50,438 nt of DNA, taken from contig NIVC01001548.1 of the NCBI GenBank assembly GCA_002269645.1, forward strand, positions 271,976 to 322,413, given 5' to 3'. The notes beneath the pieces are model-generated. The model searched no databases and was not told the DNA's origin. It worked only from the letters and a program-made list of their open reading frames with translations. The position numbers and the translations under genes were made by a program. Position 1 is the stretch's first letter; every line of letters starts with the position of its first letter. Of the stretch, positions 3,001-35,089 are shown piece after piece. This DNA comes from Macrostomum lignano (Eukaryota).

Positions 3001-6000
3001 CATAGAAGCGTCATGTAAACAATCATAGAAGCGTCATGTAAAAATCATAGAAGCGTCATGTAAACAATCACTGAAGCGTCATGTAAACAATCATAGAAGC
3101 GTCATGTAAACAATCATAGAAGCGTCATGTAAACAATCATAAAAGCGTCATGTAAAAATCATAAAAGCGTCATGAAAAAATCATAGAAGCGTCATGTAAA
3201 CAATCATAGAAGCGTCATGAAAAAGTCATAGAAGCGTCATATAAACAATCATAGAAGCGTCATGTAAACAATCATAGAAGCGTCATGTAAACAATCATAG
3301 AAGCGTCATGTAAAAAATCATCGAAGCGTCATATAAACAATCACTGAAGCGTCATGTAAAAAATCATAAAAGCGTCATGTAAAAAATCATAGAAGCGTCA
3401 TGTAAAAAATCAGAGAAGCGTCATTTAAAAAAATCATAGAAGCGTCATATAAACAATCATAGAAGCGTCATGTAAACAATCATAGAAGCGTCATATAAAC
3501 AATCATAGAAGCGTCTTTTAAAAAAATCATAGAAGCGTCATCTAAACAATCATAGAAGCGTCATGTAAACAATCATAGAAGCGTCATGTAAAAATCATAG
3601 AAGCGTCATGTAAACAATCATAGAAGCGTCATGTAAACAATCATAGAAGCGTCATGTAAACAATCATGAAGCGTCATGTAAACAATCATAGAAGCGTCAT
3701 GTAAACTAATCATAGAAGCGTCATGTAAAAATCATAGAAGCGTCATGTAAACAATCACTGAAGCGTCATGTAAACAATCATAGAAGCGTCATGTAAACAA
3801 TCATAGAAGCGTCATGTAAACAATCATAAAGCGTCATGTAAAAATCATAAAGCGTCATGAAAAATCATAGAAGCGTCATAAAACAATCATAGAAGCGTCA
3901 TGTAAACAATCATAGAAGCGTCATGTAAACAATCATAGAAGCGTCATGTAAAAAATCATCGAAGCGTCATATAAACAATCACTGAAGCGTCATGTAAACA
4001 ATCATAAAAGCGTCATGTAAAAAATCATAGAAGCGTCATGTAAAAAATCATAGAAGCGTCATTAAAAAAATCATAGAAGCGTCATATAAACAATCATAGA
4101 AGCGTCATGTAAACAATCATAGAAGCGTCATGTAAAAAATCATAGAAGCGTCTTTTAAAAAAATCATAGAAGCGTCATATAAACAATCATAGAAGCGTCA
4201 TGTAAACAATCATAGAAGCGTCATATAAACAATCATAGAAGCGTCTTTTAAAAAAATCATAGAAGCGTCATATAAACAATCATAGAAGCGTCATGTAAAC
4301 AATCATAGAAGCGTCATATAAACAATCATAGAAGCGTCTTTTTAAAAAATCATAGAAGCGTCATATAAACAATCATAGAAGCGTCATGTAAACAATCATA
4401 GAAGCGTGATGTAAAAAATCATAGAAGCGTCATATAAACAATCATAGAAGCGTCATATAAACAATCATAGAAGCGTCATGTAAACAATCATAGAAGCGTG
4501 ATGTAAAAAATCATAGAAGCGTCATGTAAACAATCATAGAAGCGTGATGTAAACAATCATAGAAGCGTCATGTAAACAATCATGAAGCGTCATGTAAACA
4601 ATCATAGAAGCGTCATGTAAACAATCATAGAAGCGTCATGTAAAAATCATAGAAGCGTCATGTAAACAATCATGAAGCGTCATGTAAACAATCATAGAAG
4701 CGTCATGTAAACAATCATAGAAGCGTCATGTAAACAATCATAAAGCGTCATGTAAAAATCATAAAAGCGTCATGAAAAATCATAGAAGCGTCATATAAAA
4801 ATCATAGAAGCGTCATGTAAACAATCATAAAGCGTCATGTAAACAATCATAGAAGCGTCATGTAAAAATCATAGAAGCGTCATATAAACAATCATGAAGC
4901 GTCATGTAAACAATCATAGAAGCGTCATATAAACAATCATAGAAGCGTCTTAAAAAATCATAGAAGCGTCATATAAACAATCATAGAAGCGTCATGTAAA
5001 CAATCATAGAAGCGTCATATAAACAATCATAGAAGCGTCATTAAAAATCATAGAAGCGTCATATAAACAATCATAGAAGCGTCATGTAAACAATCATAGA
5101 AGCGTCATGTAAAAATCATAGAAGCGTCATGTAAACAATCATAGAAGCGTCATATAAACAATCATAGAAGCGTCATGTAAACAATCATAGAAGCGTCATG
5201 TAAAAATCATAGAAGCGTCATGTAAACAATCATAGAAGCGTCATGTAAACAATCATAGAAGCGTCATGTAAACAATCATAGAAGCGTCATGTAAACAATC
5301 ATAGAAGCGTCATGTAAACAATCATAGAAGCGTCATGTAAAAATCATAGAAGCGTCATGTAAACAATCATAGAAGCGTCATGTAAACAATCATAGAAGCG
5401 TCATGTAAACAATCATAGAAGCGTCATGTAAACAATCATAGAAGCGTCATGTAAACAATCATAAAGCGTCATGAAAAATCATAGAAGCGTCATGTAAAAA
5501 TCATAGAAGCGTCATGTAAACAATCATAGAAGCGTCATGTAAACAATCATAGAAGCGTCATGTAAAAATCATCGAAGCGTCATATAAACAATAACTGAAG
5601 CGTCATGTAAACAATCATAAAAGCGTCATGTAAAAAATCATAGAAGCGTCATGTAAAAAATCATAGAAGCGTCATGTAAACAATCATGAAGCGTCATTTA
5701 AAAATCATAGAAGCGTCATATAAACAATCATGAAGCTTCATTTAAAAAATCATAGAAGCGTCATATAAACAATCATAGAAGCGTCTTTTAAAAAATCATA
5801 GAAGCGTCATATAAACAATCATAGAAGCGTCATGTAAACAATCATAGAAGCGTCATGTAAAAAATCATAGAAGCGTCATGTAAACAATCATAGAAGCGTC
5901 ATGTAAAAAATCATAGAAGCGTCATGTAAACAATCATAGAAGCGTCATGTAAACAATCATAAAGCGTCATGTAAAAATCATGAAGCGTCATAAAACAATC

Positions 6001-9000
6001 ATAGAAGCGTCATGTAAAAATCATAAAGCGTCATGTAAAAAATCATAGAAGCGTCATGTAAACAATCATAGAAGCGTCATTAAAAAATCATAGAAGCGTC
6101 ATATAAACAATCATAGAAGCGTCATTAAAAAATCATAGAAGCGTCATATAAACAATCATAGAAGCGTCATGTAAACAATCATAGAAGCGTCATGTAAAAA
6201 ATCATAGAAGCGTCATGTAAACAATCATAGAAGCGTCATGTAAAAATCATAGAAGCGTCATGTAAACAATCATGAAGCGTCATGTAAACAATCATAGAAG
6301 CGTCATGTAAACAATCATAGAAGCGTCATGTAAAAATCATAGAAGCGTCATGTAAACAATCATGAAGCGTCATGTAAACAATCATAGAAGCGTCATGTAA
6401 ACAATCATAGAAGCGTCATGTAAACAATCATAAAGCGTCATGTAAAAATCATAAAAGCGTCATGAAAAATCATAGAAGCGTCATATAAAAATCATAGAAG
6501 CGTCATGTAAACAATCATAGAAGCGTCATGTAAACAATCATAGAAGCGTCATGTAAAAATCATAGAAGCGTCATATAAACAATCATGAAGCGTCATGTAA
6601 AAAATCATAAAGCGTCATGTAAAAAATCATAGAAGCGTCATGTAAAAATCATAGAAGCGTCATTAAAAAAATAGAAGCGTCATATAAACAATCATAGAAG
6701 CGTCATGTAAACAATCATAGAAGCGTCATATAAACAATCATAGAAGCGTCTTTTAAAAAATCATAGAAGCGTCATATAAACAATCATAGAAGCGTCATGT
6801 AAACAATCATAGAAGCGTCATGTAAAAATCATAGAAGCGTCATGTAAACAATCATAGAAGCGTCATGTAAAAATCATAGAAGCGTCATGTAAACAATCAT
6901 GAAGCGTCATGTAAACAATCATAGAAGCGTCATGTAAACAATCATAGAAGCGTCATGTAAAAATCATAGAAGCGTCATGTAAACAATCATGAAGCGTCAT
7001 GTAAACAATCATAGAAGCGTCATGTAAACAATCATAGAAGCGTCATGTAAACAATCATAGCGTCATGTAAAAATCATAGCGTCATGTAAACAATCATAGA
7101 AGCGTCATATAAACAATCATAGAAGCGTCATGTAAACAATCATAGAAGCGTCATGTAAACAATCATAGAAGCGTCATGTAAAAATCATAGAAGCGTCATG
7201 TAAACAATCATGAAGCGTCATGTAAACAATCATAAAGCGTCATGTAAAAATCATAGAAGCGTCATGTAAAAATCATAGAAGCGTCATTAAAAAATCATAG
7301 AAGCGTCATATAAACAATCATAGAAGCGTCATGTAAACAATCATAGAAGCGTCATGTAAAAAATCATAGAAGCGTCATAAAAAATCATAGAAGCGTCATG
7401 TAAACAATCATAGAAGCGTCATGTAAAAATCATAGAAGCGTCATATAAACAATCATAGAAGCGTCATTAAAAAATCATAGAAGCGTCATATAAACAATCA
7501 TAGAAGCGTCATGTAAACAATCATAGAAGCGTCATATAAACAATCATAGAAGCGTCATTAAACAATCATAGAAGCGTCATATAAACAATCATAGAAGCGT
7601 CATGTAAACAATCATAGAAGCGTCATTAAAAAATCATAGAAGCGTCATATAAACAATCATAGAAGCGTCATGTAAACAATCATAGAAGCGTCATGTAAAC
7701 AATCATAGAAGCGTCATATAAAAATCATAGAAGCGTCATGTAAACAATCATAGAAGCGTCATGTAAACAATCATAGAAGCGTCATGTAAACAATCATAGA
7801 AGCGTCATGTAAACAATCATAGAAGCGTCATGTAAACAATCATAGAAGCGTCATGTAAACAATCATAGAAGCGTCATGTAAACAATCATAGAAGCGTCAT
7901 GTAAACAATCATAGAAGCGTCATGTAAACAATCATAGAAGCGTCATGTAAACAATCATGAAGCGTCATGTAAACAATCATAGAAGCGTCATGTAAACAAT
8001 CATAGAAGCGTCATGTAAACAATCATAAAGCGTCATGTAAAAATCATAGAAGCGTCATGTAAACAATCATAGAAGCGTCATGTAAACAATCATAGAAGCG
8101 TCATGTAAACAATCATAGAAGCGTCATGTAAACAATCATAAGCGTCATGTAAAAAATCATCGAAGCGTCATGTAAACAATCATAAAGCGTCATGTAAAAA
8201 TCATAGAAGCGTCATGTAAAAATCATAGAAGCGTCATTAAAAAATCATAGAAGCGTCATATAAACAATCATAGAAGCGTCATTAAAAATCATAGAAGCGT
8301 CATATAAACAATCATAGAAGCGTCATGTAAACAATCATAGAAGCGTCATTAAAAAATCATAGAAGCGTCATGTAAACAATCATAGAAGCGTCATGTAAAA
8401 ATCATAGAAGCGTCATGTAAACAATCATAGAAGCGTCATGTAAACAATCATAGAAGCGTCATGTAAACAATCATAGAAGCGTCATGTAAACAATCATAGA
8501 AGCGTCATGTAAACAATCATAGAAGCGTCATGTAAACAATCATAGAAGCGTCATGTAAACAATCATAGAAGCGTCATGTAAACAATCATGAAGCGTCATG
8601 TAAACAATCATAGAAGCGTCATGTAAACAATCATAGAAGCGTCATGTAAAAATCATAGAAGCGTCATGTAAAAAATCATAGAAGCGTCATGTAAAAATCA
8701 TAGAAGCGTCATGTAAAAATCATAGAAGCGTCATGTAAAAAATCATAGAAGCGTCATGTAAACAATCATAGAAGCGTCATGTAAAAATCATAGAAGCGTC
8801 ATGTAAACAATCATAGAAGCGTCATGTAAACAATCATAGAAGCGTCATGTAAAAATCATAGAAGCGTCATGTAAACAATCATAGAAGCGTCATGTAAACA
8901 ATCATAGAAGCGTCATGTAAAAATCATAGAAGCGTCATGTAAACAATCATAGAAGCGTCATGAAACAATCATAGAAGCGTCATGTAAAAATCATAGAAGC

Positions 9001-9780
9001 GTCATGTAAAAAATCATAGAAGCGTCATGTAAAAATCATAGAAGCGTCATGTAAAAAATCATAGAAGCGTCATGTAAACAATCATAGAAGCGTCATGTAA
9101 AAATCATAGAAGCGTCATGTAAACAATCATAGAAGCGTCATGTAAAAATCATAGAAGCGTCATGTAAAAATCATAGAAGCGTCATGTAAAAATCATAGAA
9201 GCGTCATGTAAAAATCATAGAAGCGTCATGTAAAAATCATAGAAGCGTCATGTAAAAAATCATAGAAGCGTCATGTAAAAATCATAGAAGCGTCATGTAA
9301 AAATCATAGAAGCGTCATGCAAAAAATCATAGAAGCGTCTGTAGCAATCATAGAAGCGTCATGTAAAAATCATAGAAGCGTCATGTAAACAATCATAGAA
9401 GCGTCATGTAAACAATCATAGAAGCGTCATGCAAAAAATCATAGAAGCGTCATGTAAACAATCATAGAAGTCATGTAAAAATCATAGAAGCGTCATGTAA
9501 ACAATCATAGAAGCGTCATGTAAACAATCATAGAATCGTCATGTAAAAATCATAGAAGCGTCATGCAAACAATTATAGAATCGTCATGTAAAAATCATAG
9601 AAGCGTCATGCAAACAATTATAGAAGCGTCATGTAAAAATCATAGAAGCGTCATGTAAACAATCATAGAAGCGTCATCAAAAGATCATAGAAGCCTGATA
9701 TAAAAACTAATGGAAGTGTCATTTGAGAAATCATAGAAGCGTCATGGAAGAATAAAAGAAGCGTCATGTCAGACATGAAA
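1..9780. repeat. Tandem satellite, 23-bp monomer AATCATAGAAGCGTCATGTAAAC (~425-435 copies), runs off the window start
   Basis: 23-bp period read directly (TAAACAATC at 301 and 324). Variants include GTAAAA, ATAAAC, TTAAAA, CACTGAAG, CATCGAAG and many 1-2 bp deletions. It decays progressively after ~9540. Confidence 0.99.
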
Positions 9781-9789
9781 GAAGTGTCA

Positions 9790-10900
9790 TGTAAAAATTA
9801 AAAGAAGCTATTGTGCTGTGCTGGGGAGAATTACTAAGATGTCAAGGCTCACGGAGAATAACTGAGATTTTGGGGAGGCGGTTTCTGAGATGCCAGAGAA
9901 GCAAAGTAGCAAACGTCAGAAGCTACTTCAAAGTACATGTAGTTTACTTAATTTTTTATTACATTCTTTGTTGGCTCGCTACGGGGAGGGGGCGCTGATA
10001 GAAGAAGAGTCATGTAAAAAAGAAAAGAAGCACTATGTATACATAAAAGAAGAGTCATTATGTCAAAGTTAAAAGATTCATTTGGGAATTGCTACGATGC
10101 CAAGGCTTGGAGGGAATCGCTATGGTGCTGTGATTCTTAAATAAGGAATCACTAAAATGTCAAGGCTTAGGGGAGAAGAATTGCTGAGATTTAAGGCTTT
10201 AGGTTGGGTTAAAGTTAGGTTTAGGTCAGGTTTTGGTTGATGGTTAGATTTTAGCGGGTTTCAAGATTAACAGGGGATTTTTAAGATATCAAGGTTTATG
10301 GGGGGCATCGCTAACATGACAAGGCTTACGGGGGGAATAGCTGAGATGTCAAGGCTCACGGGGAATAACCGAGATGTCAAGGCTAAATTCACAAGCTACA
10401 TGTAGATGATGTAGTTTATTGAAAAATGTTTTCATTATTTGGCTCTTCACGGGAAGGATCGCTGATAGATAAAGTGTAATGTAAAAAATAAAAGAAGCTT
10501 CATGTCGAAGTTAAGAGATTCATTTGGGAATCCCTACGATGTCGAGGCTTGCAGGGAATCGCTATAATGCTGTAGTGCTATAATGACTCTCGGAGAGAAT
10601 TACTGAAATGTCAATGCTTTAGGGTTAGGGTTAGGGTTAGGGTTAGGGTTAGGGTTAGGGTTAGGGTTAGGTTTAGAAGGTTAACAGATTTTTTAAGATT
10701 TCAAGGCTTATGGGGGGAATTGCTAAGATGTCAAGGGGGAGTTGATATGCTAAGGCTTGTGGGGGGGGGAGGAATTGCTGGCATGTCAAGGCTTACAAGG
10801 GGTTGCTGAGGTATAATGCAAAGAGACGCTTATATGTAGTTTATTAAAAAACTTGTGCTGTATTTTTTGGCTCCCCAACGGGGGGCGCTGATTGCTAGTC
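9790..10900. repeat. Degenerate ~430-470-bp triplicated junction sequence between the satellite and the LINE target
   Basis: TGTAGTTTA...TTGGCTC...CGCTGAT block at ~9938, ~10410 and ~10835. GATTCATTTGGGAAT at 10075 and 10517. Contains relics of the satellite monomer and of a GAATTGCTGAGATGTCAAG minisatellite. Confidence 0.75.
10619..10671 (+). repeat. Interstitial telomeric repeat (TTAGGG)8 + TTAGG
   Basis: Eight perfect TTAGGG units 10619-10666, then TTAGGTTTAG. Confidence 0.97.
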
Positions 10901-10934
10901 CGCTCCTAGATTCCCGAAAATCCGCCCCTAGATT
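10808..10934 (+). repeat. Target-site duplication, left copy (127 bp)
   Basis: GAGGTATAATGCAAAG...TCCGCCCCTAGATT is identical base for base to 16838-16964 and abuts the element 5' end. Confidence 0.93.
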
Positions 10935-11398
10935 GAGCACTCGAAGGCGTATTCAGCATGCCAGTGAAGTATGAGACAGACTAGGCCCATGGGCTAAGGT
11001 CTGCGATGCTTCACGCCTGCCCCTATCTTCAGCAGGTCAAGGCTGGTGGGAGGTCTGCACCCTCTATTTGCCTCTGGCAGCCGCAGACCCCCCCCCCACG
11101 CTGTCTCGCAAGTCGACCCAGGGTACTCGTCCCCGCGTGTGTTCAAGGCAGTCCCTAGGGCTGCTGGACAGACTGGGCTCCGGCGCTGGCGACCCTATCC
11201 AGTGGCTTCGGCCGAATTTGGGTATGCGGGTCTGGCTCGCCAACCTGCAGGCCGTGGTACTGCTCAACGTACTCTCTAATGCCTAAGGTGTTGACCGTGC
11301 CGATGGGCTGGAAGGCCGGGGAGTAGTCCGGTCGCAAGCGGTCCCCCTCCTGGTGTCGGGCCAGCCTTGAGGGTGCTATTGGCCTACTGCCCGGTCAG

Positions 11399-12976
11399 GT
11401 GGAGCGGCCGGGTGGGTACCGCGCCCCTTTGAGGGTAGCCCACCAACCTTTTATCATGGCCTTCGAGCCGACTATGGATAAACAAGCTATTTCTAGGGAC
11501 GGGGACCCTTCTAAACCCCAACCTCAGTCCGAAGGACCGGCCGGCCCTGCTGGCAGATCCCAACCGACTGATTCAACTGTGGCAAAGGAAGGACCGGCTG
11601 GCTCTGCTGGCAGATCCGACCAGAGCTACCAAACTCAAAATACCCTAAGACCTGCCAGCTCCGCTGGTGGATCTAAGGGAACCGCGAGCTCTGAGCCTAA
11701 AGGACCGGCCAAATCTGGCAGATCCGATGAAGCTCAGCGGGCTCGGCTTGAGCGCAAACGCGCTAAACAACGCGCCAAAAGGCAGGCCAAGAAGGGAGCT
11801 GCGGGGGCCAAAGCGGCGGCGTCCACCATGGATGCTGAAGCGACTGGAGTCCCAAGGCAACCAGGCGGGCCGGCCGGTGGAAGCTCCAGTAGTTCAGCGG
11901 CGGCGCTCCCTGGAGCTGCTGCCGCGGCTGCTGAGGCCGAAACCACGGCGCAACAAATGGCCACTGCCAACAAGGAGGTTCCTTCGGGAGCTACCTTTGC
12001 GGCGAAGGCCAAGGCCAAAATCCCGGGAGTGATCATCCAAGGTCGCGACCAGGACTGGACCACTGATCAGCTTCAAAAAGTGTGGAGTGCTGTTGACTCC
12101 TATCTGATTGAGCTGACTGTCGAGGAGGGAATCTCCATCGGCGTTGAGCGGATGGTGCTGCGAAGCACATTCGTTCTTATTGCTCCTAGCAGCGAGGAGG
12201 ACGCTCGGCGGCTGCTCCAGCGGCTACCGACGGTCTCCTTGGATGCTGACCTTGGTGGAGCTCTTTTTCTTCGCGAGGGCCAGCGTCCAAAGACGATACC
12301 CTATGTGGTTTTCGTCCCTGCTAAGAGCACCGCAGCTGGACCAGACGTTATTCGCCGGGTCCTACTGCGTCTGAACCCCGACCTCCCTGCTAGTGGACTG
12401 GTGTATCACCGCAAAGTCCGCAGGGGGGAGACGGGCAACTCAATTGTCCTCGGCCTTTCCAGCACTTGGGCGAGTCGGTACCCTAATGGATCCTCTTTCC
12501 AGCTGGGTGCCCTCAAGCTCAAGTTGCGCCGAGGAAAGTCTGCCAAAGGGAAGGCTACTGCCAACCCCGGCATCTCCGGCAAGAGCGGGGCGCAGTCTAA
12601 GGCCCAAGGAAAGGCGCAAGCCGATCCCAAAGCCAAAGCTGCATCTCGCCCCTCTGCTAGCAGCAGTTCGGCGACCGCGGTAACGGCTCCGGCCGAGCCC
12701 CGGGAACCAAACCTGCCAGTCGGAGAAGGAGTTGAGGACGAGGCCGGGTCTTCGGAATCCGAGCTCTCCTCGGCCACCTTGGTGGGGTCTGAAGGTAAAG
12801 ATGCAGGTGAGGAAGCTTCCTCCATCCTGTCATCGGAGCCTGAGGACTCTGCTGGGGGGCCGGTGGGGGTGAGGAGGCCATGGACGTCGACCAACTCCCA
12901 TCTCCCAGTCAAGCCCCAGCGGCCTGGGACGAGGACGATCTGTTGTCCAAGTCTCCTTGATGGCCCTGGGCTCTAG
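11399..12976 (+). CDS. LINE ORF1 (gag-like), low-complexity basic/acidic protein; first ATGs at 11456 and 11474
   Basis: 525-codon ORF directly upstream of ORF2. Three EGPAG.AGRS-type repeats, a basic RKRAKQRAKRQAKK stretch and an acidic C-terminus. No CCHC knuckle visible. Confidence 0.8.
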   Translation: MERPGGYRAPLRVAHQPFIMAFEPTMDKQAISRDGDPSKPQPQSEGPAGPAGRSQPTDSTVAKEGPAGSAGRSDQSYQTQNTLRPASSAGGSKGTASSEPKGPAKSGRSDEAQRARLERKRAKQRAKRQAKKGAAGAKAAASTMDAEATGVPRQPGGPAGGSSSSSAAALPGAAAAAAEAETTAQQMATANKEVPSGATFAAKAKAKIPGVIIQGRDQDWTTDQLQKVWSAVDSYLIELTVEEGISIGVERMVLRSTFVLIAPSSEEDARRLLQRLPTVSLDADLGGALFLREGQRPKTIPYVVFVPAKSTAAGPDVIRRVLLRLNPDLPASGLVYHRKVRRGETGNSIVLGLSSTWASRYPNGSSFQLGALKLKLRRGKSAKGKATANPGISGKSGAQSKAQGKAQADPKAKAASRPSASSSSATAVTAPAEPREPNLPVGEGVEDEAGSSESELSSATLVGSEGKDAGEEASSILSSEPEDSAGGPVGVRRPWTSTNSHLPVKPQRPGTRTICCPSLLDGPGL

Positions 12977-12999
12977 CCAGATATTGCATTTAATACAGT

Positions 13000-15900
13000 A
13001 TGACTAAGCTCCACGCTGCCAAAGGAGCGACATTCTGTCTGCAAATAAATTTACAGCATTGCGTATCTGCGTCAGTAAATCTGATGAAGATTGCTGAGCT
13101 GTACAGGCCAGGCCTCATCCTGATCCAGGAACCCTGGATGCGCAACGGTAAGTTGCCCAACATTCCCTCTGGCTACTCTGATTTTTATGTGTGTGGCCCG
13201 GGGAACAGCCGCCCTAGAGCGGCTATCCTCGCTGCTAGCCATCTCCAGGCTTGGCTGAGGACTGATCTCTCTGATGGAGACCTTTGCGTCATCCAATCTA
13301 ATCATTTCTCTCCGCGTACGTGTCTTGTTGCCTCGGTTTATATCCCAGGCGACAGAGACCCTGCTCCCGAGAGTTTACTGCGCCTTGCGCAGTACTGCGA
13401 GTCCCAGAACGCTGAGCTGTGCTTAGGGGGCGACCTCAACGCGCACCACAAGCACTGGGGCAGCAAAGATACCAACACTAGAGGAGAGGAGCTTCTGGCC
13501 CTCATCTCTAACACAAACCTCATGCTCTGCAACCGCGGCAGCACTCCTACCTTTAATAATGGCAGATGGACCGAGGTCCTCGACGCCACACTCGTTACCC
13601 CAAGACTCTTTGACAGAGTCAAGGAGTGGAGAGTCTGGTCTGAGGAGCCCTCCCTGTCTGACCACTGCTTTATCGCCTTTAATATCGCGGACACTAAAAC
13701 CCAGTCTCCGATCACTTGGAGACGCAATATCCGCAACACTGATTGGGCGGCCTACAAGGCTGCCCTTGATCTGCACCTGCAGGAACTCACGGACTTACGT
13801 CCGATTGAGACCTGCGAGGATGTGGATCATATGGCTGAGACGCTGACAGGTTGCATTATTGCAGCCTACGAAGCGGCTTGTCCTGCTCGCGCCTACAGAG
13901 GCAAGACCTCGGCGCCGTGGTGGAACCCGGAGCTGGGGAAACTCAGGCGGAAGGCCAAAAGCCTTCATCGCCGTGCCATGAAGACCGGAAACCCGGAGGA
14001 CATGGAGCTTTTCCGGCAAGCCTCCCGCAATTTCAAATCTGAAGTGCGCAAGGCCAAGGAATGTAAGTGGCGCCAATTCTGCAATGAATTGGATCAAGAC
14101 AGACCTACTTCTAGGCTTGTCAAGGCCCTTACAATGGACAAAATGTCCAAATTAGCCATGATCAAAAAAGATGATGGCTCTCTTACTAAAGACCCTGAAG
14201 AAGTGCTTCAGCATATGCTTAGCACATTCTTCCCGAGGGTACCTACTGCTAGACCGGAGCCCAACCATTCGATGGATGGAGCCACCCTAGCGGCGGGCAT
14301 TGTCACTGAAGACCTAATCGCTCGTGCGGTCAGAACCTTCAAACCCTTCAAATCTCCTGGACCTGATGGTATCTACCCTGTTCTCCTTCGTGAAGCAGCC
14401 AAGATACCCTCGTTCCTGAGACTCACCCGCAATCTTATGCGGGCCTCTATCCAGCTGGGATACGTTCCCAAAAGCTGGACTGAAGCTCGAGTAGTCTTTA
14501 TTCCCAAACCTGGGAAGGGTGACTACCAAAGCGTCAAGGCCTTCCGGCCAATTAGCTTAACGTCAGCAATGCTTAAGCTCACTGAGAGGCTTATTCTCTG
14601 GCGGCTGCTCTCCTGCGAGCTGACAGCGATGCCCCTCAGCAATAATCAGCACGCCTTCCGTACCGGGAGGTCGACTGACAGCGCCCTGCATGCGATTGTC
14701 GAAAAGATTGAACGGGCGGTACTGGGTGACGGTTACGCCCTGGCTCTCTTTCTTGACATTGTTGGCGCCTTCGACAACGTTATCTTTGAAGCGTTTCAGA
14801 GGGCCCTTCAAAATCGCAAAGCTCATGCTACCCTCATACGGTGGATCATGTACATGATCTCCAACCGTACGGTCACTGCCCAACTTCTTGGGCAAACTGC
14901 CTCCACCAGAGTCTGTAAGGGTGGACCCCAAGGCGGAGTCCTCACCCCGACGCTCTGGAACCTGGTCATGGACGCTCTTCTGAGTGACTCCCGACCTGAC
15001 CCCGTCTTCAAAGTCGGGTATGCTGATGACGTCACGGCCATTGTGGCAGGACCGTCTCCCAGCACGCTCAGGGATCTGATGCAGAGCTTTATCCGCAAAG
15101 CAGAATCCTGGGCCAATGACAATGGTTTGGAACTCTCTGAGCCCAAAACCGTTGCCATTATGTTTACCAGCAGACTACGCTGGAACATACGTCCTCTGCA
15201 GCTCTACGGCAGAGATATTGCCTTCGCGCACCAGACCAGATGTCTCGGGGTCACACTTGACCACCGGCTCAACTGGTCCTTCCACGTGAAAGCAAAAGCT
15301 AAGCGTGCCTCAGCCATCCTGGCCCAGCTCCGACGAGCACTTGGCACTTCTTGGGGTCTATCCCCAAAGCGGCTTTGGTGGATCTATACTTCCGTAGTTA
15401 GACCTGCCATTACGTACGCCTCTGTTGTCTGGGTTAGCGCTACCCAGGTCAAAAGCCATGCAGACCTGCTCAACACGATCCAAGGCAGAGCGTGTAGGCT
15501 CATCTGCAACGCCACCAGGTCCACGCCCTTTGCTGGCATGGGGGCCTTTCTTAATCTTCCGCCTCTTGACCTCTTCATCAGGGGTGAGGCGGCTAGAACG
15601 ACGCGGCGTCTAATTGATGCCGGCGTCAAATTCATTTACATGAGAGCACCTGCTAAGCGGAACCTTGTCCCGCATAGCGATCTGTGCCTCAACTTTCTCA
15701 ACGAGTGTCAGGCCAATCGCGTCTTCACCGATGGCATTGCCTCAACGCTCAACCTGAGACAGCGCTACTCCGTAGCTATCGACTCGCGCGATAACATCAA
15801 TGACCATTGGAACCCTGGTGAGCTTCATTGCTACACCGACGGTTCTAAGCAGTCAGCCAACACCGGCTTTGGTGTTGGAATCTTTCTGAACGGGAGGGTC

Positions 15901-16740
15901 ATCGCTACCCACGCTCAATACACTGGGGTCAACTCCAGTGTTTTCCAAAATGAAGTTCTGGCCATCAGCTCCTGCACTGCAGAGCTTCTCGCCACTGGCG
16001 TTACTGGTAAGAACATCATTTTCCATTCGGACAGCCAAGCTGCCTTGCACGCCATCAGTGGCTGCAGCACCAACTCTGCTACAGTCCTTGACTGTATCAA
16101 ACTCCTCAATGTGTTGGGTTCCGCCAACAAAATTACCCTTAAGTGGGTTCCGGGGCATGTGGGGATCCGAGGAAATGAGTTGGCTGACACCCTTGCAAAA
16201 GTTGGTGCCTCCGGCTCCTCTCTCGGCCCCGAACCTCTTGTCCCGATTCCTGGCTGTGTCATCGACTCGCGCATCAAAGCGTGGATCAGGACTCAGCACC
16301 GCTCGACTTGGGCGAACCGCACGAACTGCAGGCAATCCAGAGGCGCTGTCCCTCAGCCCTCTCACCAGCTCCGGAAGCTCCTCTTGCGCCTCTCGCGCAG
16401 AGACATCCGGGCTGCCACCATGACCCTCTCTGGTCACGGCTGCTTCTCCAGGCACCAGTACCTGCAGGGCAACGCCACCAACGCCACCTGTAGTTTCTGC
16501 AACTCAGGTGACGAAACCGCTGAGCATTTCGTCAGCATCTGTCCCGCCTTCACGCGGGCCAGACTCACTTACCTCGGGCCACACACATCTATTACTGAAG
16601 CGTGCAAACCCGAAAACTTTAATCAGCTCATGCGCTACCTTCGGGCCACCCGCAGGGCTGAACTCTCCTTTCCAGAGAGCACCATAGCTGCTGGCGACAC
16701 TGGGGGACCTCCCTGGGCGGCGCCAACCCTCCGTCCATAG
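13000..16740 (+). CDS. LINE ORF2 polyprotein: apurinic endonuclease, reverse transcriptase, RNase H, C-terminal CCHC
   Basis: EN motifs QINLQH, LIQEP, GGDLNAHH, SDH. RT motifs KSPGPDG, FRPISL, QHAFRTGRST, FLDIVGAFD, PQGGVLTP, YADD. RNase H motifs YTDGSK, SDSQAAL, WVPGH..I.GNELAD. C-terminal CSFC..ETAEHFVSIC. 1246 aa with no stops. Confidence 0.98.
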   Translation: MTKLHAAKGATFCLQINLQHCVSASVNLMKIAELYRPGLILIQEPWMRNGKLPNIPSGYSDFYVCGPGNSRPRAAILAASHLQAWLRTDLSDGDLCVIQSNHFSPRTCLVASVYIPGDRDPAPESLLRLAQYCESQNAELCLGGDLNAHHKHWGSKDTNTRGEELLALISNTNLMLCNRGSTPTFNNGRWTEVLDATLVTPRLFDRVKEWRVWSEEPSLSDHCFIAFNIADTKTQSPITWRRNIRNTDWAAYKAALDLHLQELTDLRPIETCEDVDHMAETLTGCIIAAYEAACPARAYRGKTSAPWWNPELGKLRRKAKSLHRRAMKTGNPEDMELFRQASRNFKSEVRKAKECKWRQFCNELDQDRPTSRLVKALTMDKMSKLAMIKKDDGSLTKDPEEVLQHMLSTFFPRVPTARPEPNHSMDGATLAAGIVTEDLIARAVRTFKPFKSPGPDGIYPVLLREAAKIPSFLRLTRNLMRASIQLGYVPKSWTEARVVFIPKPGKGDYQSVKAFRPISLTSAMLKLTERLILWRLLSCELTAMPLSNNQHAFRTGRSTDSALHAIVEKIERAVLGDGYALALFLDIVGAFDNVIFEAFQRALQNRKAHATLIRWIMYMISNRTVTAQLLGQTASTRVCKGGPQGGVLTPTLWNLVMDALLSDSRPDPVFKVGYADDVTAIVAGPSPSTLRDLMQSFIRKAESWANDNGLELSEPKTVAIMFTSRLRWNIRPLQLYGRDIAFAHQTRCLGVTLDHRLNWSFHVKAKAKRASAILAQLRRALGTSWGLSPKRLWWIYTSVVRPAITYASVVWVSATQVKSHADLLNTIQGRACRLICNATRSTPFAGMGAFLNLPPLDLFIRGEAARTTRRLIDAGVKFIYMRAPAKRNLVPHSDLCLNFLNECQANRVFTDGIASTLNLRQRYSVAIDSRDNINDHWNPGELHCYTDGSKQSANTGFGVGIFLNGRVIATHAQYTGVNSSVFQNEVLAISSCTAELLATGVTGKNIIFHSDSQAALHAISGCSTNSATVLDCIKLLNVLGSANKITLKWVPGHVGIRGNELADTLAKVGASGSSLGPEPLVPIPGCVIDSRIKAWIRTQHRSTWANRTNCRQSRGAVPQPSHQLRKLLLRLSRRDIRAATMTLSGHGCFSRHQYLQGNATNATCSFCNSGDETAEHFVSICPAFTRARLTYLGPHTSITEACKPENFNQLMRYLRATRRAELSFPESTIAAGDTGGPPWAAPTLRP

Positions 16741-16837
16741 CGACGCGTCGGCCGTTCAGGGACTAGCGGAATGGGCGCCCGCGCCTTCCCGCTGTGTCCC
16801 CTCCGGGACAGCCCTGCAGCTAAGTCAAGTAAGTCAA

Positions 16838-16964
16838 GAGGTATAATGCAAAGAGACGCTTATATGTAGTTTATTAAAAAACTTGTGCTGTATTTTTTGG
16901 CTCCCCAACGGGGGGCGCTGATTGCTAGTCCGCTCCTAGATTCCCGAAAATCCGCCCCTAGATT
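16838..16964 (+). repeat. Target-site duplication, right copy (127 bp)
   Basis: Identical to 10808-10934. The first G may also be the last base of the TAAGTCAAG tail, so the TSD is 126-127 bp. Confidence 0.93.
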
Positions 16965-17995
16965 CCCCGAAAATCCGCCCCTAGATTCCCCGAAAATCCG
17001 CCCCTAGATTCCCCGAAAATCTGCCCCTAGATTCCCCGAAAATCTGCCCCTAGATTCCCTGAAAATCCGCTCCTAGATTCCCGAAAATCCGCCCCTAGAT
17101 TCCCCGAAAATCTGCCCCTAGATTCCCCGAAAATCTGCCCCTAGATTCCCCGAAAATCTGCCCCTAGATTCCCCGAAAATCCGCCCCTAGATTCCCCGAA
17201 AATCTGCCCCTAGATTCCTCGAAAATCTGCCCCTAGATTCCCTGAAAATCCGCTCCTAGATTCCCGAAAATCCGCCCCTAGATTCCCCGAAAATCTGCCC
17301 CTAGATTCCCCGAAAATCTGCCCCTAGATTCCCTGAAAATCCGCTCCTAGATTCCCGAAAATCCGTCTTTAGATTCCCGAAAATCCGCCCCTAGATTCCC
17401 TGAAAATCCGTCCCTAGATTCCCGAAAATCCGCCCCTAGATTCCCCGAAAATCTGCCCCTAGATTCCCCGAAAATCTGCCCCTAGATTCCCTGAAAATCC
17501 GCCCCTAGATTCCCTGAAAATCGCCCCTAGATTCACTGAAAATCCGCCCCTAGATTCCCTGAAAATCCGCCCCTAGATTCACTGAAAATCCGCCCCTAGA
17601 TTCCCTGAAAATCCGCCCCTAGATTCACTGAAAATCCGCCCCTAGATTCCCCGAAAATCCGCCCCTAGATTCCCCGAAAATCCGCCCCTAGATTCCCCGA
17701 AAATCCGCCCCTAGATTCCCCGAAAATCCGCCCCTAGATTCCCCGAAAATCCGCCCCTAGATTCACTGAAAATCCGCCCCTAGATTCCCCGAAAATCCGC
17801 CCCTAGATTCCCCGAAAATCCGCCCCTAGATTCCCCGAAAATCCGCCCCTAGATTCCCTGAAAATCGCCCCTAGATTCCCCGAAAATCCGCCCCTAGATT
17901 CCCCGAAAATCCGCCCCTAGATTCCCCGAAAATCCGCCCCTAGATTCCCCGAAAATCCGCCCTAGATTCCCAAAACATCCGCCCCTAGATTCCTC
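16928..17995. repeat. 23-bp C-rich minisatellite CTAGATTCCCCGAAAATCCGCCC (~46 copies), at the start of GUF1 intron 5
   Basis: 23-bp period (TAGATT at 17643 and 17666). Its first units are part of the TSD. Confidence 0.97.
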
Positions 17996-18050
17996 TAACA
18001 TCCGTCCTAAGATTTACTAAAACCCGCCCAGATTCCCCAAAACCTCTCAC

Positions 18051-19414
18051 CTGAAACGGTGTCAACGGCTCGTCTTTGGAGTTTTCATCACTCGAACCGC
18101 CCCCGCCTACAACAGTATCGCCAACCAGAGCCTCTCTGGTGCTGCGCATACTACTAATTAAGTAGCCAACCAGGCCGCAACTTAGCGAGTCGATGGGCTG
18201 CGGCTCGGGCCTGAACACGCCGACCTCTTTAACCGTGTGAGCAATTTTGGGTTGATGCAAGCTGCGAAATTCGTCACCAGGTTTTAGGAGGCCGGATTTG
18301 GCCGCCACAAGACAGACGGCGCCTTTGTAGGGCTCGAACCAGGAGTCAACGATTAGGCCTTTGAAGCTGGACGAGCGGTGGTCGGCTTGATCAGCAGTGG
18401 AGGGCGGTGGTATTCGGTGAACAATGGCTTCCAGTAGCTGGTCAATGTTGATGGCCTTTTTGGCTGACACCTCAATTACCTGGGAGGAGGGGTTAGGCGA
18501 GGGAGATGGTAGATAAGGGTGAGGGAGATGGTAGATAAGGAAGTGAGGTAGATAACGGAATGAGGTAGATAAGGGAGTGAGGGAGATAACGGAATGAGGT
18601 AGATAAGGGAGTGAGGGAGATAACGGAATGAGGTAGATAAGGGAGTGAGGGAGATAAGGGAGTGAGGTAGATAAGGGATTGAGGTAGATAAGGGATTGAG
18701 GTAGATAAGGGAGTGAGGTAGATAAGGGATTGAGGTAGATAAGGGATTAAGGTAGATAAGGGATTGAGGTAGATAAGGGAGTGGGGTAGATAAGGGAGTG
18801 AGGGAGATAAGGGAGTGGGGTAGATAAGGGATTGAGGTAGATAAGGGATTGAGGTAGATAAGGGAGTGAGGTAGATAAGGGAGTGAGGTAGATAAGGGAG
18901 TGAGGTAGATAAGGGAGTGAGGTAGATAAGAACAAGAAATGGTGCAGGCAATTCTCACCTGGTCAGGCTCAATGCCGAACAAACTCTGGAGCTGTTTTTT
19001 CACCTCATCCGGTTTGGCATTGGGCAGGTCGATCTTGTTAATCACAGGTATGATCGGCAGCTCGGCCGTGAAGGCCAGGAAATAGTTGGCGATGGTCTGC
19101 GCCTGAACACCATCGTTGGCGTCAACCAGCAGCACGACGCCGTCCGAAGCGGCCACCGAACGGTGCACTTCGTGGCTGAAATCCACGTGACCCGGCGTGT
19201 CCACCAGGTTGAGCAGGTAGGTGGACCCAGTGCTGGGGGACTGGTAGAACAAGGCGACCGTCTGTGCCTTGATGGTGATGCCGCGGTCGCGCTCGATTTT
19301 CAGCCGGTCCAGCACCTGCTGGTTCTGGGGACCGGCCTGGATGGCGCCTGGGGGCAGGGTTGGGATGCTGGATGACAGACAGACAGACAGACAGACGGAC
19401 AGACAGACAGGCAC

Positions 19415-19461
<47 letters not shown>

Positions 19462-19866
19462 CACAGCTCACCAGTGCACTCCAGCAGTCTATCAGAGAGT
19501 GTACTCTTCCCGTGGTCCACATGAGCAATGATGCTGAAGTTGCGAATCAAGCTGGTGTCGAACTTGCTGAGGTCAAGCGGTGCGGGCTGCAAGGTGTTAA
19601 TGAAATGCTGAATAGAATTAATTATAAAATCTATTTTTAGAACTCGATGGTCAGAACTAAGCAGAGCGCAGGTCTCACTTTGCTAGCAGGCTTTGAGAAC
19701 AGTCGATGCAGAGGTTTAAAAGCGAATTGCAGGGATCTGAAAGCAGAAAATAACAGGCCAAGTCAATATCGAACAACCTACATACCTGCAGATGAAACTA
19801 TTTTTAAGTTTACACTGTAAATTCTTACCGCAATAACCTTTCACACCTGCCGCATAGATGAATCAT
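18051..19866 (-). CDS. GUF1: Translation factor GUF1/LepA (EF4), mitochondrial; exons 1-5 only (~337 aa)
   Basis: Exons 19866-19847, 19736-19679, 19586-19472, 19347-18959 and 18479-18051, all GT-AG with matching phases. Motifs [46 protein letters not shown] and [10 protein letters not shown]. Downstream exons not found in the window. Exons 1-2 are less certain. Confidence 0.92.
18497..18930. repeat. 17-bp minisatellite GAGGTAGATAAGGGAGT in GUF1 intron 4
   Basis: Direct reading; lies between donor 18958 and acceptor 18480. Confidence 0.95.
19374..19465. repeat. (ACAG)n microsatellite in GUF1 intron 3
   Basis: Direct reading. Confidence 0.95.
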
Positions 19867-22619: not shown

Positions 22620-24868
22620 TCACACGAAACCATCCAACTTTGAGTAAATCTTCAATCGTTCAACCGAAGCTTGAACAGACTGTTTCAACTGGGATCCCTC
22701 CGGGTGCACATCCGGGCACAGGCAGGTGAGCACAGACTCAGCCCAGGCAGCAGGAGTGAGCAGGCAGCCGCTGAACAGGCGACAGACCTTTGCCAGGCAC
22801 AACGGGCACAGCTCCAGAGGCTGGGTGAGCGCGGCCGCCATGGACTCGCTGCCGTTCATGTTGCAGGCGAAGCAGCAGCAGTGGTCCAGGCCCAGCAGGT
22901 GGCCCAGCTCGTGGCTCAGCACCTTGCGCACCCGCCAGTCGGCGCTGGTCAGCGGGTTGCCGCCGGCTCCGTCCGATTCTCCGTCGTCAAGGACGCCATC
23001 GTTGATAGGCGCCGAGGAGCCTCGGCCGAAGCACACCACCGCCGCTTTGTGCATCGCCGATGACTGGCCGAGAATGAAGGCGCCGTTCTGTCCAGGCCCC
23101 AGCATGTCCGGCCCGGGGTACAGGTCCGTGTGGCACACGCCCACCTGGACTGAGGCACCGGTTGCTGCGGTGGCGGTAGGGTGATGCAGCAGCAGGCAGC
23201 GGAGCAACGAGCCCGCTTCGAAGCGAATGGAGCCTTTGATCTCCTGGGTAAGAAGCGGTGCTTGGGGAATTTAATTTGTGTGAGCAGCTCGGGATCTGCG
23301 AGGCTGGCCCAGCAACTGAGGATCTGGGAGGCTGGCCCAGCAACTGAGGATCTGCGAGGCTGGCCCAGCTACTGAGGATCTGCGAGGCTGGCCCAGCAAC
23401 TGAGGATCTGCGAGGCTGGCTGAGCAACTGAGGATCTGGGAGGCTGTGGCCCAGCAACTGAGGATCTGCGAGGCTGGCCCAGCAACTAAGGATCTGCGAG
23501 GCTGGCCTAGCAACTGAGTATCTGGAAGGCTGGCCCAGCAACTGGGGATCTGGGAGGCTGGCCCAGCAACTGAGGATCTGGGAGGCTGGCCCAGCAACTG
23601 GGGATCTGCGAGGCTGGCCTAGCAACTGAGGATCTGGGAGGCTGGCCCAGCAACTGACACTCTGGGAGGCTTGCCCAGCAACTGAGGATCTGGGAGACTG
23701 GCCAAGCAACTGAGGATCTGGGAGGCTTGCCCAGCAACTGAGGATCTGGGAGGCTTGCCCAGCAACTGAGGATCCGGGAGGCTTGCCTAGCAGCTGAGGA
23801 TCTGGTAATCAAGCAGACACAACCGCACCCTGCGAACAACATCGTCCCGCGCAGCAAGAAAGCCGCACTCGGGCTGCAGCTGCAGGTCCAGGCAGGGAAA
23901 ATAGGCCCTCAGGTAGGGCATGGCGTCCCTCAGGGCGGCCGAGAGCCGAGGCGGCAGCGGCTCCAGCTGGCGAATCAGGACAACCCGCTTGGCGCCTGAC
24001 GAATCCGGGTTGAACCAGCTCAGCAGGTGGTTGAGCTGCATGCTCACCTGCGGGATTGATATTGATCAGAGAAATGGGGTGAGATTGATTAGAGAAATGG
24101 AGTGAGATTGATTAGAGAAATGGAGTGAGATTGATTAGATGGGAAAAGGGGTGAGATTAATTAAGAAATGGGGTGAGATTGATGGGAAATGGGGTGAGAT
24201 TGATTTGGGAAATGGGGTGAGATTGCAGAATGGAGTGAGATTGATTAGAGAAAAGGAGTGAGATTGATTAGAGAAATGGAGTGAGATTGATTAGATGGGA
24301 AAAGGGGTGAGATTAATTAAGAAATGGGGTGAGATTGATGGGAAATGGGGTGAGATTGATTGGGAAATGGGGTGAGATTGATTTGGAAATGGGTGAGATT
24401 GATTGGGAAATGGCATGAGATTAATTGGGAAATGGTGAGATTGATTTGGAAATGGGGTGAGATTGCAGAATGGAGTGAGATTGATTAGAGAAATGGAGTG
24501 AGATTGATTAGAAAAATGGGGTGGGATTGATTGGGAAATGGGGTGAGATTGATTGGGAAATGGGTATGATTGATAGTGTAATAGGGTGAGATTGATTGGA
24601 ACGTGAGATGAGATTGATAGGTTTGTCTCACCTTCCACCGACTGTAGGACTGCATTCTGCGCAGCTCAGCACTGGCTGGCTTCAGCTGCACAGCCAATGA
24701 GCTATCGGCAAGCAACCGCCTGAGTTCAGCCTCATCCTCAGGCTGATCTTCATTTGAGCTCCCAGCCGCCAACAGCCAGCGATGAAATCGGTGCGGCTCC
24801 AAACGCAGCAGGGACCGATTGGATCGATAAAAGCCGTCCCTGGGACAGCAACGGCCGCAGCTGGGCAT
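22620..24868 (-). CDS. AMZ2: Archaemetzincin (peptidase M54, AMZ2-like), 3 exons, ~359 aa
   Basis: Exons 24868-24632, 24047-23829 and 23243-22620, all phase 0. Motifs DLYP, FILGQS, HELGHLLGLDHC..C.MNGS (metzincin zinc motif plus Met-turn) and LELCPLCLAK. Start codon is inferred. Confidence 0.9.
23288..23805. repeat. 28-bp minisatellite GGCCCAGCAACTGAGGATCTGGGAGGCT in archaemetzincin intron 2
   Basis: Direct reading; the same family recurs at 40960-41335. Confidence 0.96.
24055..24620. repeat. ~23-bp purine-rich minisatellite GAGATTGATTAGAGAAATGGAGT in archaemetzincin intron 1
   Basis: Direct reading; variable unit length. Confidence 0.93.
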
Positions 24869-26514: not shown

Positions 26515-27230
26515 GCACAGACAGATACTAAGACAGGCACTAAGACAGACAGACAAAGACAGAAAGACAGGCAGCACAGCACAGAAAGACGGATACTAAG
26601 ACAGACAGACAGTCAGATGCAGACAGCACAGGACAGCACAGATAGACGGGCGGACAGACAGACAGACAAACAGACAGAAACAAAGACAGACAGGCAGACA
26701 GAAAGACAGACAAAGACGGACAGGCAGACATGCAGAGAGACAGACAGACAGACAGACATTCAGAGAGACAGACAGACAGACAGGCAGACAGAAAGACAGA
26801 CAAAGACGGACAGGCAGACATGCAGAGAGACAGACAGACAGACAGACAGACATTCAGAGAGACAGACAGACAGACAGGCAGACAGAGAGACAGACAAAGA
26901 CGGACAGGCAGACATGCAGAGAGACAGACAGACAGGCATTCAGAGAGACAGACATTCAGAGAGACAGACAGCACAGACAGACAGACAGACATTCAGAGAG
27001 ACAGACAGCACAGACAGACAGACAGACATTCAGAGAGACAGACAGCACAGACAGACAGACAGACATTCAGAGAGACAGACAGCACAGACAGACAGACAGA
27101 CATTCAGAGAGACAGACAGCACAGACAGACAGACAGACATTCAGAGAGACAGACAGCACAGACAGACAGACAGACATTCAGAGAGACAGACAGCACAGCA
27201 CAGACAGACAGACAGGCAGAGACAGACAGA
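26515..27230. repeat. Compound (ACAG)n/(AG)n microsatellite with higher-order ACATTCAGAGAGACAG units, intergenic
   Basis: Direct reading. Confidence 0.95.
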
Positions 27231-27470: not shown

Positions 27471-34121
<6,651 letters not shown>

Positions 34122-34689: not shown

Positions 34690-34841
34690 ATAAACAGACA
34701 GACACAGATAGACACAAACGGATACGGTGCACGCAGACCGACGAATCAGAAAGACTCGCTAACAGAGACAGACAGACAGACAGACATACAAACAGACAGA
34801 CAGACAGACAGACAGACTGACAGACAGACACTAAGACAGAA

Positions 34842-34886
<45 letters not shown>

Positions 34887-34925
34887 TACAAACAGACAGA
34901 CAGACAGACAGACAGAGAGACAGAC

Positions 34926-35010
<85 letters not shown>

Positions 35011-35011
35011 A

Positions 35012-35088
<77 letters not shown>

Positions 35089-35089
35089 G
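34690..35089. repeat. (ACAG)n microsatellite starting immediately after the calpain stop codon
   Basis: Direct reading. Confidence 0.97.

What the first reader, a model, noticed from the sequence alone, without database searches (positions are those of the whole stretch)
10808..16964. APE-type (LOA-like) LINE with a perfect 126-127-bp target-site duplication
Seen: 10808-10934 and 16838-16964 are identical and abut both element ends exactly. Established: TPRT elements usually make TSDs of about 5-20 bp, and a ~126-bp TSD is known for R9 of bdelloid rotifers, which is a restriction-like-endonuclease element. Inference: an APE/RNase H element placing its second nick ~126 bp (12 helical turns, near a nucleosome wrap) from the first would be an unusual integration mode. 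Zero mismatches mean a recent insertion.
Basis: partly seen in the sequence, partly recalled or inferred. Interest (0 to 1): 0.82.

Follow-up and report, generated by a model that had tools for sequence, protein, structure and literature searches.

The report
Young flatworm LINE with 127-bp duplication
An intact, recently inserted 5.9-kb LINE retrotransposon of a Macrostomum flatworm is flanked by a perfect 127-bp duplication of its target site. That is about ten times the usual length, but one copy cannot show whether it is a one-off or a habit of this element family.

Summary
Window 10808-10934 and 16838-16964 are identical (127/127) and abut a 5903-bp element (10935-16837). This is the only dispersed exact repeat in the window. 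The element is a full-length two-ORF LINE. ORF2 (1246 aa) is uninterrupted and carries APE, RT (YADD), RNase H (D-E-D-H-D) and a C-terminal CCHC. The upstream repeat copy continues the upstream ~440-bp repeat units and the downstream copy runs in phase into a 23-bp satellite, so the 127 bp is target DNA, a true target-site duplication. The host is Macrostomum lignano or a very close relative, and the family is multi-copy and young there. No other genomic copy, empty allele or read was reachable, so "an unusual integration mode" is not shown. Six distant relatives (28-32% ORF2 identity) with both ends readable have TSD candidates of 13-20 bp, and none of 54 loci tested has a flanking repeat longer than 20 bp. 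APE-type L1 is already known to make occasional long TSDs (92 bp in neurons, "several hundred" in reviews). "LOA-like" is untested: the domains only place it in the RNase-H-bearing I group. Verdict: a real, long TSD on an ordinary LINE, of moderate interest until more copies are measured.

The parts
10808..10934 (+). Upstream copy of the 127-bp target-site duplication. It is contiguous with the upstream ~440-bp repeat units. Positions 1-62 are 29% GC and positions 63-127 are 60% GC.
10935..16837 (+). Full-length LINE (non-LTR retrotransposon), 5903 bp, 57% GC, lying in 43-52% GC flanks.
10935..11455 (+). 5' UTR (521 nt, 63% GC). Homology to the sister family L001 starts at about 10968. The L001 contig starts 34 nt upstream of that point, and the window element starts 33 nt upstream of it.
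11456..12976 (+). ORF1, 506 aa from the first ATG (525 aa from an upstream GTG at 11399). It has no Pfam domain and no CCHC knuckle. A conserved core (residues 180-357) is 39% identical to L001 ORF1; the flanks are low-complexity.
13000..16740 (+). ORF2, 1246 aa and uninterrupted. APE: residues 13-230 (nt 13036-13689). RT: residues 501-752 (nt 14500-15255), with YADD at 674. RNase H: residues 942-1070 (nt 15823-16209), with D947/E985/D1011/H1053/D1063. CCHC: residues 1164-1181 (nt 16489-16542).
16741..16837 (+). 3' UTR (97 nt). A hairpin at about 16760-16799 is conserved with L001, with one compensatory pair.
16819..16837 (+). 3' terminus GCTAAGTCAA plus one extra GTAAGTCAA unit. The shared terminal motif CCCTGCAGCTAAGTCAA is also the end of homology in L001.
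16838..16964 (+). Downstream copy of the 127-bp target-site duplication. It runs in phase into the 23-bp satellite at 16929-18004.

Best explanation
[quoted passage not shown] Inferred course of events: the ORF2 APE nicked the bottom strand opposite 10807|10808 (top strand ...GGGGTTGCT|GAGGTATAAT...). That 3'-OH primed cDNA synthesis on the RNA 3' end (...GCUAAGUCAAGUAAGUCAA, with up to 1 nt of microhomology). The whole 5.9-kb RNA was copied. The top strand was then broken 126-127 bp downstream, inside the second unit of the 23-bp satellite (...CCCCTAGATT|CCCCGAAAAT...). Filling the two 127-nt single-stranded gaps produced the perfect duplication. Shown: the duplication, its exact abutment to both element ends, its origin as target DNA, the intact element and its youth. 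Inferred: the order of events and who made the second break. I judge this most likely a single event at the long tail of the second-break distance, as documented for the APE-type L1, rather than a fixed property of the family. The first 62 bp of the interval are AT-rich (29% GC), which may have let the target unwind until the GC-richer satellite; that point is speculative.
For: The repeat is perfect at 127 bp and the flanks outside it are unrelated. It is the only dispersed exact repeat in the window. Both copies are continuous with their own flanks. The element ends are defined independently by a 57%-identical sister element: the same 3' terminal motif and 3'-UTR hairpin, and a 5' start within 1 nt. 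ORF2 is intact with all APE, RT, RNase H and CCHC motifs. Its APE is most similar to the TRAS1 endonuclease among solved structures (2.5e-16). The family is young and multi-copy: M. lignano gene models contain pieces 96-100% identical to ORF2 and 92% identical to ORF1, fused to unrelated domains (annexin, lipocalin, piggyBac transposase), so the copies lie in different contexts. Distant relatives with both ends readable have short TSD candidates: L076 17 bp, L074 14, L072 14-20, L031 14, L106 13, L083 13. None of 54 loci tested has a flanking repeat longer than 20 bp. [quoted passage not shown] Somatic L1 insertions include TSDs over 40 bp and one of 92 bp, and long TSDs were seen with engineered L1 in HeLa cells (PMC4398972).
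Against: Only one copy of the family could be examined, and no empty allele or reads were available. The relatives with short TSDs share only 28-32% ORF2 identity, so they say little about this family. TSD length is reported to be clade-specific (PMC6007223). A sporadic 127-bp TSD is rare for any single insertion. The length matches R9's constant 126 bp, which could hint at a shared ruler rather than chance.
Confidence: 0.57

Rival explanations
1. Long TSDs are the family's rule. The ORF2 protein, or a dimer or chromatin-bound complex of it, places the second-strand break at a fixed distance of about 126-127 bp, as the RLE element R9 does. This would be an APE-type LINE with a built-in long stagger.
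For: A 127-bp TSD is far outside the usual range of 20 bp or less and equals R9's 126 bp. Families with regular very long TSDs exist: R9, and Dualen-4b_cRei with a median of 900 bp. A rare event is a priori no more likely to be seen on a single inspected copy than a rare type of family.
Against: No second copy was measured. The wider clade has TSDs of 13-20 bp. ORF2 has the ordinary I-group domain set with no extra nuclease domain. The contig of the closest relative, L001, runs 530 bp past the element's 3' end without the break that a repeat of 31 bp or more would be expected to cause in a de Bruijn assembly. This is weak evidence, and void if that contig is a transcript.
Confidence: 0.28
2. 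The target already carried a tandem duplication of the 127-bp segment, and the LINE inserted exactly at the junction of the two copies without making a TSD of its own.
For: The region is built from tandem repeats of many periods. No empty allele was available to exclude this.
Against: No 127-bp periodicity exists nearby; the local periods are about 440 bp upstream and 23 bp downstream. The insertion would have to hit one exact phosphodiester bond out of 127 and also leave neither a TSD nor a deletion. The two copies are identical, whereas neighbouring repeat units differ by 10-40%.
Confidence: 0.04
3. It is an assembly artefact: a false join or false duplication in a satellite-rich region created the second copy of the 127 bp.
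For: The surroundings are highly repetitive. No reads could be inspected.
Against: Untrimmed overlaps give adjacent duplications, not copies separated by precisely one complete element. The boundaries coincide to the base with element termini that were defined independently from another species' copy. Each copy is continuous with a different unique flank.
Confidence: 0.05
4. The second break was not made by the element. The cDNA was primed at an APE nick, but the top-strand discontinuity was a pre-existing nick, an Okazaki-fragment end or a stalled fork in the satellite, so the 127 bp reflects host DNA metabolism.
For: The top-strand break lies inside a tandem satellite. The two break sites share no motif. 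Long L1 TSDs have been linked to chromatin state (PMC4398972).
Against: Nothing in the sequence distinguishes this from an element-made second nick. The complete 3' end with its tail and the full-length 5' end fit normal endonuclease-dependent TPRT.
Confidence: 0.06

Closest known systems
I-group non-LTR retrotransposons (clades I, Loa, Nimb, R1, Ingi, Tad1, Loner, Outcast)
   Same: It has two ORFs. ORF2 carries an N-terminal APE, an RT, an RNase H downstream of the RT and a C-terminal CCHC. It has a structured 3' UTR and a short tandem-repeat tail, and it makes a TSD on insertion.
   Different: The clade is not resolved. ORF1 lacks the CCHC knuckles that I recall for I and LOA ORF1s (the recollection was not verified). 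The TSD of this copy is about ten times the 13-20 bp seen in distant relatives.
R9 of bdelloid rotifers (Gladyshev and Arkhipova 2009, cited in PMC9977147)
   Same: The TSD is 126 bp there and 126-127 bp here.
   Different: R9 belongs to the R2-type elements with a restriction-like endonuclease, is specific for rDNA, and the paper title attributes the long TSD to the elements as a class. The element here has an APE, sits in a satellite and repeat junction, and a single copy is known.
Dualen-4b_cRei of Chlamydomonas reinhardtii (PMC9977147)
   Same: It is a LINE whose new insertions are flanked by very long target duplications.
   Different: Dualen encodes both RLE and APE, and the duplications are variable with a median of 900 bp. 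Here only APE is present and the duplication is 127 bp.
Sporadic long TSDs of human L1 (PMC4398972; PMC1291365)
   Same: It is an APE-type LINE inserting by TPRT. Its usual TSD is under 20 bp, with occasional TSDs over 40 bp, one of 92 bp, and 'several hundred' nt. This is the best functional analogy for a one-off event.
   Different: It belongs to a different clade (L1, no RNase H in animals) and has a poly(A) tail. The frequency of such events in I-group elements is unknown.

Membership tests
APE-type non-LTR retrotransposon, I group | N-terminal apurinic/apyrimidinic-like endonuclease domain | tested here: met
   Pfam Exo_endo_phos_2 at 8.4e-21 and Exo_endo_phos at 5.3e-14, residues 15-225. 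Best PDB match is the TRAS1 EN at 2.5e-16. The QEP, GDLNA and SDH motifs are present.
APE-type non-LTR retrotransposon, I group | Reverse transcriptase with a YADD active site | tested here: met
   RVT_1 at 9.8e-28, residues 501-752. YADD is at residue 674.
APE-type non-LTR retrotransposon, I group | [quoted passage not shown] | tested here: met
   RNase_H at 1.3e-10, residues 942-1070. D947, E985, D1011, H1053 and D1063 are invariant in an 18-sequence alignment.
APE-type non-LTR retrotransposon, I group | No LTRs; the insertion is flanked by a target-site duplication and has a defined 3' end | tested here: met
LOA clade | RT domain groups with Loa, Lian, Baggins and Bilbo in a phylogeny with named references | not testable with these tools
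   No named reference LINE sequences (Repbase) were available. All close database relatives are unnamed metagenome or Logan proteins.
LOA clade | ORF1 with CCHC zinc knuckles (recalled from memory, not verified here) | tested here: not met
   ORF1 contains only two cysteines, adjacent at its C-terminus, and has no Pfam hit even at E<=10.
R9-like long-TSD elements | Restriction-like endonuclease and rDNA target specificity | tested here: not met
   The endonuclease is APE, and no further nuclease family was hit in Pfam. The target is a junction between a repeat unit and a 23-bp satellite, not rDNA.
R9-like long-TSD elements | The same long TSD in all copies | not testable with these tools
   No other genomic copy was reachable: exact-protein look-ups of ORF1, ORF2 and a neighbouring gene found nothing.
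Dualen/RandI | Both RLE and APE endonucleases in one protein | tested here: not met
   Only APE was detected; the C-terminus after RNase H holds just a CCHC motif.

The most novel reading that the evidence does not exclude
This Macrostomum LINE family regularly places its second-strand break about 126-127 bp from the first, the same distance as the unrelated RLE element R9. That would point to a chromatin- or complex-geometry ruler for second-strand cleavage that is independent of the endonuclease type. It would also give an APE-type system in a transgenesis-capable animal in which the poorly understood second half of TPRT could be dissected.
Probability: 0.25. Interest if true: 0.75.

Novelty: new member of a known kind. 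Interest (0 to 1): 0.36.

Why it matters
How LINEs cut the second strand and finish integration is the least understood step of target-primed reverse transcription. TSD length is the genomic read-out of that step. A family that regularly made 127-bp TSDs with an ordinary APE would be a useful natural experiment, especially in M. lignano, where transgenesis exists. As it stands, the data show one well-preserved example of a long-stagger insertion by an active I-group LINE. It is a good, cheap lead (a genome-wide TSD survey would settle it), but not yet evidence for a new integration mode.

Tried and rejected
1. Other genomic copies. Exact-protein look-ups of ORF2, ORF1 and the neighbouring MACPF ORF found nothing on record, so this genome is not in the contig collection. 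The closest M. lignano hits are UniRef or metaclust gene models without DNA.

2. Closest relatives. P0001 (56%) has no retrievable DNA. P0002/L001 (57%) starts at the element's 5' end, so it has no upstream flank.

3. Scans of metagenome, prokaryote-genome and viral contigs with an 18-sequence ORF2 profile. These returned 80, 10 and 12 loci. The viral hits were phage RNase H only. The others are distant relatives at 21-40% identity, used only for the TSD survey.

4. Clade placement. No named references were obtainable. The PDB gives only the TRAS1 EN and the L1 and R2 RTs. Papers on M. lignano repeats do not classify LINEs. A search for DUF4780, found in a relative's ORF1, was uninformative.

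5. Known RNA families in the UTRs, including HDV-like ribozymes. Nothing reached a meaningful score.

6. The idea that the 127 bp belongs to the element (LTR-like or terminal repeat). Rejected, because each copy is continuous with its own flank and has no homology to L001.

7. A tandem duplication of a 6030-bp unit. Rejected, because only 127 bp is repeated.

8. The R9 paper itself is not held; its result is cited through PMC9977147.
Full report
**Observation**

A repeat search over 9500-18500 returns one two-copy family of 127 nt at 100% identity: 10808-10934 and 16838-16964, spaced 6030 bp apart. A direct string comparison confirms 127/127. The 30 nt outside the repeat are unrelated (30% and 23% identity). 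A self-comparison of the whole window shows this is the only dispersed exact repeat that is not part of a tandem array. The stretch between the copies, 10935-16837 (5903 bp), occurs once in the window.

The length is 126 or 127 bp. The first G could also be templated by the element's terminal TAAGTCAA(G) repeat.

**What lies between the copies**

The interval is GC-rich (57%, against 43-52% in the flanks) and has two long ORFs on the + strand.

- **ORF2** (13000-16740, 1246 aa) is uninterrupted.
  - It hits Exo_endo_phos_2 and Exo_endo_phos (residues 15-225), RVT_1 (501-752) and RNase_H (942-1070).
  - The motifs QEP, GDLNA, SDH, YADD and TDGS, and a C-terminal CX2CX8HX4C motif, are all present.
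  - In an 18-sequence alignment the RNase H residues D947, E985, D1011, H1053 and D1063 are invariant.
  - Among solved structures, the endonuclease part is closest to the TRAS1 EN (2.5e-16).
- **ORF1** (11456-12976, 506 aa from the first ATG) has no Pfam match even at E<=10 and only two cysteines, so it has no CCHC knuckle. A core of about 180 aa is 39% identical to the ORF1 of the nearest relative.

**Host and family**

Several Macrostomum lignano gene models (UniRef or metaclust) contain pieces 96-100% identical to ORF2 and 92% identical to ORF1. These pieces are spliced to unrelated domains: annexin, lipocalin and a piggyBac-type transposase.

The window is therefore from M. lignano or a very close relative. 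The family is multi-copy, dispersed and young.

**Are 10935 and 16837 the true element ends?**

The closest full-length relative is P0002 (57% aa identity), on Logan contig L001.

- At the 3' end the two share a 3'-UTR hairpin, with one compensatory pair, and the terminal motif CCCTGCAGCTAAGTCAA. Homology stops there. The window copy has one extra GTAAGTCAA unit and then the repeat begins.
- At the 5' end, homology begins at window position ~10968. L001 starts 34 nt upstream of that point and the window element starts 33 nt upstream of it.

So the repeat abuts a complete element at both ends.

**Is the 127 bp target DNA?**

Yes. The upstream copy continues the upstream repeat units: family D3 runs across the boundary (10767-10812), and the D10 motif recurs at 9937, 10409 and 10834, keeping the ~440-bp period. 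The last 36 nt of the repeat are the first 1.5 units of the 23-bp satellite (16929-18004) that follows the downstream copy in phase. L001 has no homology to the 127 bp.

The reconstructed empty site is ...GGGGTTGCT[127 bp]CCCCGAAAAT.... This is the structure expected of a target-site duplication from breaks staggered by 126-127 bp.

**Rival explanations for the repeat**

- **Pre-existing tandem duplication hit exactly at its junction.** There is no 127-bp periodicity nearby. The two copies are identical, whereas neighbouring repeat units differ by 10-40%.
- **Assembly artefact.** This would not place the copies exactly one complete element apart.

Neither can be formally excluded without an empty allele or reads. 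I give them about 4% and 5%.

**Is the long TSD a property of the element?**

This could not be tested directly. ORF2, ORF1 and a neighbouring gene are not on record in the contig collection, so no second copy of the family could be examined.

I surveyed more distant relatives instead. An ORF2 profile retrieved 80 metagenome loci and 10 loci from prokaryote-labelled assemblies, and three more contigs came from protein look-ups.

- Of 54 loci with some flank on both sides, none has a flanking direct repeat longer than 20 bp.
- Six show TSD candidates: L076 17 bp, L074 14 bp, L072 14 bp (20 bp with one mismatch), L031 14 bp, L106 13 bp after a poly(A) tail, and L083 13 bp.
- In four of them a shared 5'-end motif (AACCTC) follows the upstream copy directly.

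These six relatives are only 28-32% identical in ORF2. They show that the wider group behaves ordinarily, not how this family behaves.

**Literature**

- TSDs from TPRT are mostly 20 bp or less, and their length is reported to be clade-specific (PMC6007223).
- R9 makes 126-bp TSDs, and Dualen-4b_cRei makes duplications with a median of 900 bp (PMC9977147).
- APE-type L1 also produces occasional long TSDs: "several to several hundred nucleotides" (PMC1291365). Somatic neuronal insertions include TSDs over 40 bp and one of 92 bp, and long TSDs were seen earlier with engineered L1 in HeLa cells (PMC4398972).

A long TSD on a single APE-LINE copy is therefore unusual but has precedent.

**Clade**

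[quoted passage not shown] The domain set places the element in that group and no further. "LOA-like" remains untested, because no named reference sequences were available. The cysteine-free ORF1 argues mildly against it, on my unverified recollection of LOA ORF1s.

**Mechanism proposed**

This is standard TPRT.

1. The first nick is on the bottom strand opposite 10807|10808.
2. cDNA synthesis starts from the RNA's (G)TAAGTCAA tail.
3. The full-length RNA is copied.
4. The top strand breaks 126-127 bp downstream, inside the second satellite unit.
5. Gap fill-in completes the duplication.

The duplication and its junctions are shown by the sequence. The order of events and the agent of the second break are inferred. 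The first 62 bp of the interval are 29% GC and the rest 60%. Easy unwinding up to the GC-richer satellite might have shifted the second break; this is speculation.

**Verdict**

| Reading | My probability |
|---|---|
| A real TSD of any kind | about 0.85-0.9 |
| A one-off long stagger | about 0.57 |
| A family-typical long stagger (the novel case) | about 0.25-0.28 |

The match with R9's 126 bp is intriguing, but it is a single data point.

Noticed in passing
window 1-9795: A 9.8-kb AT-rich 23-bp satellite (AGCGTCATGTAAACAATCATAGA, about 434 copies, 91% matches) runs off the left end of the window.
   Followed up: no
window 10619-10676: An interstitial vertebrate-type telomere repeat, (TTAGGG) x 9-10, sits 130 bp upstream of the LINE insertion site. 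It lies inside ~440-bp units that carry the motif GGGGGAATTGCTAAGATGTCAAGG. The same motif forms a 28/54/82-bp array at 41872-42130.
   Followed up: partly
window 17985-19592 (- strand): Exons of an EF-Tu-type GTPase lie on the minus strand (GTP_EFTU_D2 at 17985-18470, GTP_EFTU at 19122-19592), with a 17-bp minisatellite (18530-18930) between them. The LINE and its 23-bp satellite lie just beyond the 3' end of this gene, convergent to it.
   Followed up: partly
window 37804-40998 (- strand): Calpain (Peptidase_C2) exons at 37804-38301 and 40489-40998 are separated by several minisatellite arrays with periods of 29, 22 and 18 bp.
   Followed up: no
window 18000-42200: More than 15 different minisatellite and microsatellite arrays (periods 4, 17, 18, 19, 21, 22, 23, 28, 29, 33, 34, 40, 41 and 47 bp) fill most of the non-coding sequence. 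The 28-bp unit GGATCTGGGAGGCTGGCCCAGCAACTGA forms two arrays 17.6 kb apart (23292-23805 and 40961-41333, about 86% identical). (AGAC)n tracts recur at 26543-27230, 30512-31138 and 34766-35089.
   Followed up: no
window 46416-50381 (+ strand): An uninterrupted 1321-aa ORF has a MACPF/perforin domain, six ephrin-receptor-like cysteine-rich repeats and a TNFR/ELAPOR-like module. It is an apparently intronless gene for a pore-forming-type protein.
   Followed up: no
window 16760-16837; L001 5880-5962: The 3'-UTR hairpin and the terminal motif CCCTGCAGCTAAGTCAA are conserved between two LINE families whose ORF2 proteins are only 57% identical. This suggests the RT recognises a specific 3' RNA structure (a 'stringent' type LINE). 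No Rfam family matches it.
   Followed up: partly
L105 759-1916; L082-L084: The ORF1 of a 36%-identical relative carries Pfam DUF4780 (1.6e-31), so that domain of unknown function is a LINE ORF1 domain in at least some I-group elements. Several such eukaryotic LINEs sit in contigs deposited as bacterial MAGs (Gammaproteobacteria, Pseudomonadota, Opitutia), which indicates contamination in the binning.
   Followed up: no
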